In this document: positions 43,808 through 46,747 of the stretch, piece after piece
Position numbering within the stretch: the first letter of the stretch is position 1
How the letters are laid out: every line of letters begins with the position of its first letter
From: Felis catus
Taxonomy: Eukaryota
Length of the DNA stretch: 64,000 nucleotides
Assembly (NCBI RefSeq): GCF_018350175.1
Contig: NC_058374.1
Coordinates: forward strand, 136,586,001 to 136,650,000
Direction: 5' to 3'
Position numbers and translations under genes: made by a program
The notes under the pieces: model-generated
What the model was told of the DNA's origin: nothing
The model's database searches: none
The model's input: the letters and a program-made list of their open reading frames with translations, nothing else

Positions 43808-43920
43808 TTATAAATAAAAGTCAAACGTCAGGTCACACTTCCCCATCTTCTGTTTGTACACCAAGTCAAACTTCTCGTTCATGGAGACAGTGAAGATGTC
43901 CTTCCACAGCCCGACTCTTC
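43808..43920 (-). CDS. SULT4A1: SULT4A1 terminal coding exon 7 (113 nt CDS incl. TAA), KxxxTVxxxE dimerisation motif
   Basis: (G)RVGLWKDIFTVSMNEKFDLVYKQKMGKCDLTFDFYL*; ttgcag|GA; stop TAA at 43808-43810. Confidence 0.98.
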
Positions 43921-45309
43921 CTGCAACACAAACGAGAGCAGAGTGTGCTGAATTCACTCGCCGCCGGGCCAGATACCGAACCAAAGGGAGCCTTGGAAAT
44001 GGTTCTGGAAGGTTCCAGATCTATTTCTGGACCCTTCTGAGCTTGGCCTAGCGGGGGCAGGACAGGCCACCTGAACCCGTTTCCCTGAGGCTGGTCATCC
44101 TGGTGTCCCTTCCCTGCTGGGTGGGGCCCACGGGCACGGATACGCAGAGCCGAGGCTCGCAAGCAAGGCCTCGGCCCCTGTTCCCTGGCGGATGCCCGGC
44201 ACCCAGGCACAGGGCGGGGGATTCACAACACCCTGGAGGACAGTCAGTCTCCGGGGAGCAGATCTGCTGCTCTAGGCATCGTGTGGACTTGGGTCCTCTG
44301 TGCCAGCATTATTCACTCGACTCGACAGCTCCGCCAAGTTGGCATTTGCTTGTGGAGAATTTAAAAAGGAAAAAAAGAAAAAATCATCCAAAAAGACAGA
44401 ACCTTTCATGGTGAGCAGGAGGCCTCCTGGCTGGGTCAAGGGTGAAGATTTTGAGAAGCCCGCCCCTGCAACCTTGGGGAGGACCTTAAAGGGATCAGAA
44501 GACCCCACTGGAAACGCACTTGCACAACTAGACGCCGAGTGTGTGCTTCGCCCACTCAGCCCCGCGTGGGTCGCGGGCGATCTCCAGTCACTCTTTGCAG
44601 CTCCGGCTCAGGCAAGGGCTCGATCAAAACACAAGACCTTTCCTGGCAGGCGTGCAGGGGCACGGAGCCCGCCGACCAGCGAGCAGGTACGGGCTACCCG
44701 TTCACTCATGAAGTCTTCGGGGAAAGAGAGCTCAAAATGCCTCCCCGAAGCCACTGAACTCACTTTCCTCGTGACCTACAAAATCTCCGGCTGGTCTGGT
44801 CAAATGTGAACGGTGACCGGGAGGGCGGCAGGAGTGGGGGGTTCTAAGCCCCCATCTCCAGGGGCCGTGAAGGCCGTCACCGGGGCACTGCCATCATGCT
44901 TTGGAGTAACACAGCCTCGGGGGACAGAAATGCTCATTTAGAATTCCTTTCCGTGTCAGCATCTCTGAGATCGGAGCTCTGACCGTCTCCAGCAAACAGA
45001 CTTCGTTAGCTCCGTTATAACAGAAGCCCCTGTCCTGGCAGGACCTCAAGTATGAAACTGCAAGCCCGCCAACGCTGAGCCAATAGATCTGCCACGACGA
45101 GGATTTTTCTCGTCGGTAATGCAAAATCAGACATCAGTGTCGGCGAGGAAAAAAAAAAAACCAAACGGGAGAGGCTGTTCTTGCTACCCTCTAATGATAC
45201 CTAAGGGACGAAATTAGAAGCTTCTAGACCAGCCACACTGTAAATATATTTTTCCACGATTATTTTTCTCAGCTGAGGCAGCTGAGAGCTCATCAAAGGA
45301 GTCACCCAC

Positions 45310-45442
45310 CTGGTTTAGGGTTTGGAATCAAGACAGTGCAATATATGCTGTGATATGAATCAAATTTAAGCAACGCAGCTGTCTGCTCAAGCCCTACGTT
45401 CTCACCAACGCAAGGAGGTCTTCTGAGCAAAGAGGCAATGTG
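45310..45442 (-). other. SULT4A1: SULT4A1 poison/pseudo-exon (6p) in intron 6
   Basis: Long polypyrimidine tract and ttttcttttag|CACATT acceptor; in frame with exon 6 gives AHCLFAQKTSLRW-TGA; donors TG|gtgaga (45406) and CAG|gtgggt (45310). The peptide resembles the human short-isoform tail as I recall it (AHCVFARKIFLSW). Confidence 0.85.
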
Positions 45443-46608
45443 CTAAAAGAAAACAAAATCAAAGAACTGAAATAAAGCAAAACCAAGGTAAACAATGATA
45501 AAGCAAACACATCAGAAGGAGCATATGGGCACGCAGTATGTTCTCGCCACTTCGTTACCACGCAAACGAACCAAAAGGGGTATTTTGGAGAAGGTCACAT
45601 CCAAGGATAACAAAACACAGCAAAAGCAAAACTAAAAAAAGAGCAAATAAATTTTAAATAATAAATATTTGTGAAGATGCAGCCAGGGAAATAATCCGCG
45701 AGGCACTGCGGTTTCGGTCGACTGCTCTGCCTTTACAGGAGGGCTCTCCCCGCCTGACCTTGAGAACGGCCGCCTCGGGCCGCCCCGGTCTAGAGGAAGG
45801 GCACAAAGCTGGAGGGGCCCCTCCGCAGGACGCGCCGCAGCGCGCGGCCCGCGGCGCCAGCCCAGGTAGGCCCGCGCGTCCAAGATGCGCAGCTGGCTCC
45901 AGCCGCACTTCCGGGCCGGCCCCTGGAACATTCCGTCACCTGCGGACGCTCTGAATTCACCCAGCTGGGAACCAGAGGCAGGTCTGCGGCACCCAGCGTC
46001 ACGGGCAATTCACACTTGCCAAGAGGGTGGCTGCCGTGGCCACAGCCACCAACCGGGGGACAGGGCATTTATTTTAATGCCCGAGTTCTCCACGGTCAGG
46101 TGGCTTCAAATATCATGAGCCTTGAAGGACAGACAGCAGCCGGGGCGGACCCGGAGAGGGCTCCTTCCTGCCTGGACTGTGTCCTCCGCCTCAAGGTGCT
46201 TCAGGCCCGAGAGCCAGCTCTGTGCCAGGAGCGAGCGCCGGCCTCCGAGAAGCCCGCGCGGCACCAGCACCCACCGTGGGGACGGAGGGCCCATCCACAG
46301 GCCCCGAGCTTCGAAACTTCACAGCCCCGAGCCCTTCCCGGGCTCCACTGGGCGGGGTGTCTGGGAAGGCGTCTGCCTGAAACGTCCGCCCACAAAGCCC
46401 GGGACATCCCAGCCTTCTCCCCGTGACCTAAAAGGCCACCCGCACGGCTACAAGGCAAATGCCAGCAGAGGGCCCCGCGGGGCTCCATCCACAGCAGCCG
46501 GCTTTCGGATGGCCTTCTGGCCCTCACGGAGCAGAGGGCTCTGGAGAAACGTGGCCCGGGGCAGAGGACGCTGACGTGGGGGGCAGGGGGGAGGGGCCAC
46601 GTGCGTAC

Positions 46609-46747
46609 CCCGGCCCACGGGCAGGGCCTCGGCGTTGCAGCACTGGTCCACCAGCTGGTGGCAGTGCTCGCTCAGGGCCTCCAGCTGCGCCTTGTCACAG
46701 GACACCCCCAGGAATCTGGCCAGCTGCTCCACCATCGTCACCAGGTC
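46609..46747 (-). CDS. SULT4A1: SULT4A1 coding exon 6 (139 nt)
   Basis: DLVTMVEQLARFLGVSCDKAQLEALSEHCHQLVDQCCNAEALPVGR+G; ttccag|GAC ... CGGG|gtacgc. Confidence 0.98.

What the first reader, a model, noticed from the sequence alone, without database searches (positions are those of the whole stretch)
45310..45442. Hidden poison exon in SULT4A1 intron 6 encoding AHCLFAQKTSLRW-stop
Seen: an AT-rich island in a GC-rich intron with a strong acceptor at 45443. Spliced to exon 6 it gives 13 new residues and TGA at 45404-45402 (260 aa total), 92 nt upstream of a CAG|GTGGGT donor. This removes the C-terminal PAPS loop and the KxxxTVxxxE dimerisation motif and predicts NMD. Established, from memory and to be verified (UniProt Q9BR01 isoform 2; pseudo-exon 6p literature): human non-neuronal SULT4A1 includes such an exon ending AHCVFARKIFLSW, 8/13 identical with the same length and stop. 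It is absent from the ORF track. Inference: a neuron-specific on/off switch conserved between primates and carnivores, where splice sites and stop are constrained more than the peptide.
Basis: partly seen in the sequence, partly recalled or inferred. Interest (0 to 1): 0.85.

Follow-up and report, generated by a model that had tools for sequence, protein, structure and literature searches.

The report
Cat copy of SULT4A1 poison exon 6p
The flagged 133 bases are the cat version of an already described "poison" exon (6p) that switches off the brain gene SULT4A1 outside neurons; the sequence is real and very strongly conserved, but its use in cat RNA could not be tested here.

Summary
On the minus strand, SULT4A1 exon 6 ends at 46609 in phase 1. 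A 133-nt cassette (45442-45310) lies in a low-GC island. It has the second-best acceptor and the best donor of the 2688-nt intron. Spliced to exon 6 it reads AHCLFAQKTSLRW, then TGA at 45404-45402, 92 nt before its donor.

It is the orthologue of human exon 6p. Human isoform 2 (Q9BR01-2, 260 aa) ends AHCVFARKIFLSW, 8/13 identical to cat. Annotated 260-aa isoforms of stoat, Arctic fox, fallow deer, hippo, camel and vaquita, and the 266-aa elephant seal model, end 13/13 as in cat.

In a five-mammal alignment the exon is 90% identical to cat, against 58% for distal intron and about 94-95% for exons 6 and 7. Both splice sites are invariant. A homologous exon with the same splice-site contexts exists in a hummingbird and a lizard, with the stop at codon 3.

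The mechanism is published for human cells and mouse embryonic tissue: 6p inclusion, premature stop, predicted decay, unstable truncated protein, and MBNL/CELF-driven skipping on neuronal differentiation. This is therefore a correct rediscovery. The amniote-wide depth of conservation may be unreported.

The parts
46609..46747 (-). SULT4A1 exon 6 (139 nt, ends in phase 1; weak donor GGG|GTACGC)
   Evidence: A phmmer search with its 46-aa translation hits proteins that sources name sulfotransferase 4A1.
45443..45700 (-). Conserved upstream intron flank. It holds the pyrimidine tract, branch-point-like TTTAT/TTGAT, a skipped AG 24 nt upstream of the acceptor, and an alternative upstream acceptor whose first exon base is 45631.
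   Evidence: Identity to cat is 0.70-0.95 per species, against 0.40-0.68 in the distal intron. The long-form tails of Pteropus medius, Talpa and sheep models match the cat reading from 45631.
45310..45442 (-). Poison cassette exon 6p (133 nt, length not a multiple of 3)
45402..45404 (-). In-frame TGA, 92 nt upstream of the 6p donor; it overlaps a GGTGAG 5'-splice-site-like motif
45180..45309 (-). Donor and conserved downstream intron flank
   Evidence: The donor ranks first in the intron. It is invariant in 5 mammals, the hummingbird and the lizard. Flank identity is 0.76-0.94.
43808..43920 (-). Exon 7 coding part (PAPS-loop remainder, KDIFTVSMNE dimerisation motif, stop TAA), lost from the 6p product
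   Evidence: PMC4079325 places the dimerisation motif in exon 7.

Best explanation
Window 45442-45310 (minus strand) is the felid orthologue of SULT4A1 alternative exon 6p, a conserved cassette coupled to nonsense-mediated decay. [quoted passage not shown] That stop lies 92 nt before the last exon junction, so the mRNA is predicted to be an NMD target. Any protein made (260 aa) lacks the exon-7 part of the PAPS loop and the dimerisation motif, and in human cells that protein is unstable. Skipping the exon gives the 284-aa protein. By analogy with human cell lines and mouse embryonic tissue, inclusion should be the default outside mature neurons, and skipping should be promoted on neuronal differentiation, with MBNL/CELF proteins reported as the factors. 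Shown here: the anatomy, the orthology, and strong purifying selection on the exon and about 0.4 kb of flanking intron. Inferred: that cat cells use the exon, and use it in a tissue-specific way.
For: Anatomy. Splice-site ranks: donor 1st of 146, acceptor 2nd of 173. Orthology: the tail is 13/13 identical to annotated 260-aa isoforms of Mustela erminea, Vulpes lagopus, Dama, Hippopotamus, Camelus and Phocoena and to the 266-aa Mirounga model, and 8/13 identical to human Q9BR01-2. Conservation: mean identity to cat in 4 other mammals is 0.90 for 6p, against 0.575 +/- 0.092 (max 0.795) for 133-nt intron windows outside the island. The acceptor and donor contexts are invariant. Depth: the hummingbird intron 6 matches at 73.6% over 148 nt, E 7e-18. 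The exon found there reads AH-stop, exactly the tail of the annotated hummingbird and eagle X2 isoforms. The lizard matches a profile built without the cat row at E 9.4e-24. Every orthologue keeps an in-frame stop. The island is single-copy in this genome and matches no Rfam family. Mechanism in human and mouse: PMC4079325, PMC11275347, PMC12137872. Three of the four YGCY motifs that are invariant in the five mammals lie inside the exon.
Against: The 20 runs that hold the exon are only guessed to be RNA, and a flanking intron stretch is held just as fully by the same class of runs, including X5 and X7. No cat isoform was seen among the listed cluster members. Predicted XP_ isoforms in other species may rest partly on protein homology rather than RNA. 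YGCY and GU-rich motif counts are not enriched per 100 nt. The review PMC11275347 itself notes that MBNL and CELF are widely expressed, so the source of neuronal specificity is unresolved.
Confidence: 0.85

Rival explanations
1. The island is a conserved intronic regulatory element that is rarely or never joined into mature cat mRNA. Examples would be a decoy exon that promotes retention of intron 6, or a splicing enhancer/silencer platform for exons 6 and 7. In this view the exon-like look reflects spliceosome recruitment, not inclusion.
For: Conservation extends about 260 nt upstream and 130 nt downstream of the exon at nearly the same level. Exon 6 has a weak donor that could need help. [quoted passage not shown] No cat RNA evidence was obtained.
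Against: The human cDNA contains exactly this cassette (126-127 nt) and gives a 260-aa product. Many species carry annotated isoforms spliced at precisely these sites. An in-frame stop is kept in every lineage examined, which a pure binding platform would not require.
Confidence: 0.08
2. In cat the main alternative product uses other sites in the same island, so the 133-nt form is minor. Candidates are the upstream acceptor at 45631 (322-nt exon, stop after 25 codons) and the internal GTGAGA donor at 45405 (37-nt exon).
For: The 45631 acceptor has the top PWM score in the intron. It is conserved in cat, seal, hippo and bat. Its reading matches the annotated tails of Pteropus medius X3, Talpa X1 and a sheep model. 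The internal donor ranks 5th of 146 and GGTGAG is invariant in five mammals.
Against: Most annotated isoforms, including all three carnivore models, use the 133-nt form. The 45631 AG is lost in the mole rat. The internal GT is not positionally kept in bird or lizard.
Confidence: 0.05
3. It is a chance pseudo-exon: fortuitous splice-site-like motifs in an intron, with no function.
For: Introns hold many decoy sites; this one has 146 GT and 173 AG dinucleotides.
Against: Exon-level conservation across mammals and detectable homology in a bird and a lizard. The peptide is identical to annotated isoforms.
Confidence: 0.02

Closest known systems
Human SULT4A1 alternative exon '6p' (variant transcript; UniProt Q9BR01-2, 260 aa)
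   Same: Same intron, same phase, same first residues (AHC), same 13-residue tail length and stop position, and same loss of exon 7 functions. 8/13 tail residues are identical.
   Different: Cat exon is 133 nt. The human exon is reported as 126 nt (PMC11275347) or 127 nt (397-270 bp amplicons, PMC4079325). Five tail residues differ. Expression and regulation have been tested only in human and rodent cells and mouse embryonic tissue, not in cat. Cat and human DNA were not aligned here.
Annotated 260-aa SULT4A1 isoforms of other mammals (e.g. Mustela erminea XP_032201897.1, Vulpes lagopus CAK7296757.1, Phocoena sinus XP_032502686.1) and the 266-aa Mirounga leonina model XP_034843127.1
   Same: Tail is identical, 13/13. 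Seal genomic DNA is 95.5% identical over the exon, with identical splice sites.
   Different: These are computed gene models. Their RNA support was not visible with these tools.
Conserved poison exons (AS-NMD cassettes), e.g. the ultraconserved ones of SR-protein genes, and neuronal-gene NMD switches (established knowledge; general literature such as PMC4379411, PMC11188260 and PMC11632617, which were seen only as titles and abstracts in search lists and were not opened)
   Same: A premature-stop exon with flanking intron conserved as well as coding exons; productive splicing is restricted to one cell state.
   Different: SULT4A1 is not an RNA-binding protein, so no autoregulatory loop is expected. 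Conservation is high (0.77 of exon columns invariant in 5 mammals) but not ultraconserved in the strict sense.

Membership tests
SULT4A1 exon 6p (human variant exon) | Lies in the intron between SULT4A1 exons 6 and 7 | tested here: met
   Exons were located by motif and by protein matches named sulfotransferase 4A1.
SULT4A1 exon 6p (human variant exon) | Cassette of about 126-133 nt with AG/GT boundaries | tested here: met
   The cat exon is 133 nt, with the acceptor ranked 2nd and the donor 1st in the intron. The human size comes from papers.
SULT4A1 exon 6p (human variant exon) | In-frame premature stop giving a 260-aa product with a new 13-residue tail | tested here: met
   The tail is 13/13 identical to seven annotated mammalian isoforms and 8/13 identical to Q9BR01-2. 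The 260 total is inferred, because exon 1 lies outside the window.
SULT4A1 exon 6p (human variant exon) | Included in transcripts of non-neuronal cells and skipped in mature neurons | not testable with these tools
Run-index hits are not discriminating. Tissue labels are coded.
SULT4A1 exon 6p (human variant exon) | Skipping promoted by MBNL/CELF | tested here: inconclusive
   Four invariant YGCY motifs lie in the island, three of them in the exon. There is no per-bin enrichment. The primary paper (Idris 2019) is not held.
Conserved poison exon (AS-NMD cassette) | Stop more than 50-55 nt upstream of the last exon junction | tested here: met
   92 nt in cat, seal and bat, 93 in hippo, 121 in hummingbird, 110 in lizard. 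Only 5 nt in the mole rat, an exception.
Conserved poison exon (AS-NMD cassette) | Exon and flanking intron conserved well above neutral intron | tested here: met
   0.90 against 0.575 +/- 0.092. Bird match E 7e-18 and lizard match E 9.4e-24.
Conserved poison exon (AS-NMD cassette) | Transcript stabilised when NMD is blocked | not testable with these tools
   Needs an experiment.

The most novel reading that the evidence does not exclude
Exon 6p is not a primate or mammalian 'pseudo-exon' but an amniote-wide regulatory cassette more than 300 million years old, sitting in a conserved island of about 0.5 kb. Hummingbird and lizard keep the same acceptor and donor contexts, with the stop at codon 3 (TGA). 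Mammals read TGC there and stop at codon 14 or later. So selection has kept a premature stop plus RNA sequence rather than any peptide. Annotated fish isoforms with other short tails after exon 6 hint that premature-stop splicing in this intron could be older still. No paper in the searchable library joins SULT4A1 with 'poison exon', and two broader term searches listed nothing on conservation of this exon beyond mammals.
Probability: 0.65. Interest if true: 0.45.

Novelty: already known. Interest (0 to 1): 0.3.

Why it matters
For annotation, the cat gene has a second, non-productive splice form. RNA-seq quantification and variant interpretation in intron 6 should take it into account, because changes in the island could alter SULT4A1 dosage. 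For biology, SULT4A1 is an orphan, highly conserved neuronal protein linked to Phelan-McDermid syndrome. Conservation of its off-switch exon at coding-exon level across placentals, and its recognisable presence in sauropsids, argue that silencing the gene outside neurons by splicing is itself under strong selection. The invariant blocks define a compact sequence set for finding the factors that confer neuronal specificity, which the literature still calls unresolved.

Tried and rejected
(1) Reads. No letters of 45297-45335 were sent to any search tool afterwards. Later DNA queries stopped at 45336 or 45296, the profile used on the lizard and gar was built without the cat row, and the cat stretch was used only in local alignment scripts.

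(2) Run index. 6p is held at 1.00 by 20 runs from 10 studies. The adjacent intron stretch 45460-45860 is held at 1.00 by 19 runs of the same guessed-RNA class. I therefore rejected this as evidence of expression.

(3) Genomic loci by protein look-up. Sheep P0031, hummingbird X2 and fox P0161 were not on record. Elephant and bilby gave no DNA because the file was too large.

(4) Gar intron 6 gave no significant match (E 1.2). The intron has a 94-N gap, which was left as is. Homology outside amniotes is not shown.

(5) Plain blastn of cat against lizard found nothing. The profile search did.

(6) Papers. Idris 2019 and Falany 2000 are not held. A search for 'SULT4A1' with 'poison exon' gave 0 papers. 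Broader searches added nothing specific.

(7) Rfam gave no family match in the island flanks. A search of this genome found no second copy, so the island is not a recognisable repeat.

(8) Motif density of YGCY, UGU, PTB, RBFOX and TDP-43 sites per 100 nt showed no clear enrichment.

(9) A spliced 260-aa cat protein could not be submitted by reference, so I could not check whether a cat isoform is in the public protein collection.

Full report
**Observation**

Reading the minus strand confirms each stated coordinate.
- Exon 6 of a SULT4A1 gene runs 46747-46609 and ends in phase 1 before GTACGC.
- A long pyrimidine tract ends in AG at 45444-45443.
- The candidate exon is 45442-45310 (133 nt).
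- The carried-over G plus the exon reads AHCLFAQKTSLRW, then TGA at 45404-45402. That is 92 nt before the donor quoted in the finding.
- Exon 7 begins at 43920 and encodes GRVGLWKDIFTVSMNEKFDLVYKQKMGKCDLTFDFYL. The truncated product therefore loses the KxxxTVxxxE motif.

GC falls to 0.39-0.43 over about 45100-45700, inside an intron of 0.6-0.72.

The gene identity is secure. Motif mapping places exons 2 to 7 in the window. Exon 1 lies about 11.8 kb beyond the window end on the same contig, and the locus is single-copy. A phmmer search with the exon 6 translation returns proteins that their sources name sulfotransferase 4A1.

**Is it more than chance?**

- The 6p donor is the best of 146 GT sites in the 2688-nt intron.
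- The 6p acceptor is second of 173 AG sites.
- Exon 6's own donor is weak.

The stronger test is conservation. I obtained SULT4A1 loci for elephant seal, hippopotamus, a flying fox and a blind mole rat. I aligned exon 6 through exon 7 with the cat sequence. Mean identity to cat over the four species:

| Region | Mean identity |
|---|---|
| Exon 6 | about 0.95 |
| 6p exon | 0.90 |
| 6p, 41 nt up to and including the stop | 0.96 |
| 6p, 92 nt after the stop | 0.87 |
| Exon 7 coding part | about 0.94 |
| 133-nt intron windows outside the island | 0.575 +/- 0.092 (max 0.795) |

- The only intron windows as conserved as 6p overlap its own acceptor region.
- The conserved island spans about 45700-45180.
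- The acceptor context and first 27 exon bases are invariant in all five mammals, and so are the last bases of the exon plus the donor.
- The island is unique in this genome and matches no Rfam family. It is neither a recognisable repeat nor a described RNA gene.

**What it is**

The phmmer hits included proteins in which exon 6 is followed by a short new tail. Naming them shows the following.
- Human isoform 2 (Q9BR01-2, 260 aa) and human isoform X4 end AHCVFARKIFLSW.
- The 260-aa isoforms of Mustela erminea, Vulpes lagopus, Dama dama, Hippopotamus, Camelus bactrianus and Phocoena sinus, and the 266-aa Mirounga leonina model, end AHCLFAQKTSLRW, 13/13 as in cat.
- Other lineages show small variations: Pongo, squirrels, a lemur and several bats.
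- Some lineages have moved stops: elephant 15 aa, chinchilla and degu 19, Molossus 32, mole rat 41.

The cat stretch is therefore the orthologue of the human exon called 6p.

**Mechanism (from the literature, not tested here)**

- PMC4079325 shows a human variant transcript with about 127 extra bases between exons 6 and 7.
  - It is widely expressed outside brain and in undifferentiated neuroblastoma lines.
  - Differentiation switches cells to the productive form.
  - No variant protein is detectable, and the truncated protein is unstable (half-life 2-3 h).
  - The missing dimerisation motif is needed for stability.
- PMC11275347 describes the 126-bp exon 6p, the 260-aa product and NMD priming. 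It cites MBNL/CELF and FUS as factors. It also notes that the source of neuronal specificity is still unknown.
- PMC12137872 summarises Idris 2019, which reports MBNL/CELF-promoted exclusion in SH-SY5Y cells, human iPSCs and mouse embryonic tissue.

For cat, the stop lies 92 nt upstream of the last junction, beyond the 50-55-nt rule, so NMD is predicted. Four YGCY motifs are invariant in the five mammals, and three of them lie inside the exon. That is compatible with MBNL repression, but motif density is not enriched.

- The hummingbird intron 6 holds a clear homologue: 73.6% over 148 nt, E 7e-18, using only cat bases 45720-45336 as query.
- It has the same acceptor and donor contexts. The exon there reads CA CAT TGA, which gives AH-stop.
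- That is exactly the tail of the annotated X2 isoforms of that hummingbird and of the golden eagle.
- A profile built from the four non-cat mammals plus the hummingbird finds the element in intron 6 of the lizard Zootoca (E 9.4e-24). There it reads CT CCT TGA.
- All seven orthologues keep an in-frame stop. Exon lengths are 118-134 nt.
- The nucleotides encoding the mammalian peptide cannot be conserved for the peptide's sake, because in sauropsids translation ends at codon 3. The constraint is at RNA level.
- The gar intron gave no match, but it contains a 94-N gap that I left untouched.
- Annotated fish isoforms with different short tails after exon 6 were noticed but not resolved.

**What could not be done**

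The tool states that this is no evidence of anything.
- The run index lists 20 runs holding all sampled words of 6p. A control with flanking intron 45460-45860 gives 19 equally complete holders of the same guessed-RNA class, including two of the same runs. These hits say nothing about splicing.
- Inclusion in cat RNA and its tissue pattern therefore remain inferences from orthology.

**Verdict**

- It is untested for cat expression.
- It needs amending on what is constrained.
- The system is already known from human and mouse work and is annotated in many mammals, so novelty is low.
- The amniote-wide conservation and the relocated stop are the only parts that may be new.

Noticed in passing
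window 45631 (first exon base, minus strand); long form 45631-45310: The best-scoring acceptor in intron 6 lies 189 nt upstream of the 6p acceptor. Read from there, cat gives VLLLLCFVILGCDLLQNTPFGSFAW-stop. This nearly matches the annotated tail of Pteropus medius isoform X3 and resembles those of Talpa X1 and a sheep model. The AG is conserved in cat, seal, hippo and bat but lost in the mole rat.
   Followed up: partly
window 45408-45400: The TGA stop overlaps a GGTGAG 5'-splice-site-like motif (donor PWM rank 5 of 146) that is invariant in five mammals. Use as a donor would give a 37-nt exon and a frameshifted exon 7. The GT is not positionally kept in hummingbird or lizard.
   Followed up: partly
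window 46603-46611: The exon 6 donor (GGG|GTACGC) is weak by PWM (4.65, against 9.9 for the 6p donor). The same donor context is seen in seal, hippo and flying fox. A weak upstream donor next to a strong cassette may be part of the switch.
   Followed up: no
proteins P0173 (Salmo trutta X2), P0175 (Polyodon X2), P0178 (Scleropages X2): Ray-finned fish have annotated SULT4A1 isoforms whose sequence diverges right after exon 6 into short unrelated tails (4-20 aa). The tails do not start with Gly, so they are spliced rather than intron read-through. This may be an analogous premature-stop exon in the same intron. No sequence homologue was found in gar intron 6.
   Followed up: partly
L005 (Nannospalax) intron 6 and protein P0162: In the blind mole rat, small indels just before the usual TGA shift the frame. 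The stop moves to a TAA 5 nt before the donor, so the 41-aa-tail isoform should escape the 50-55-nt NMD rule. A GT-rich insertion also sits upstream of the exon.
   Followed up: no
window 44350-44450 and 44900-45050 and 46300-46450: There are secondary conservation bumps in intron 6 (0.62-0.78 mean identity, against about 0.5 background). The first is T-rich and AT-rich.
   Followed up: no
   Followed up: no
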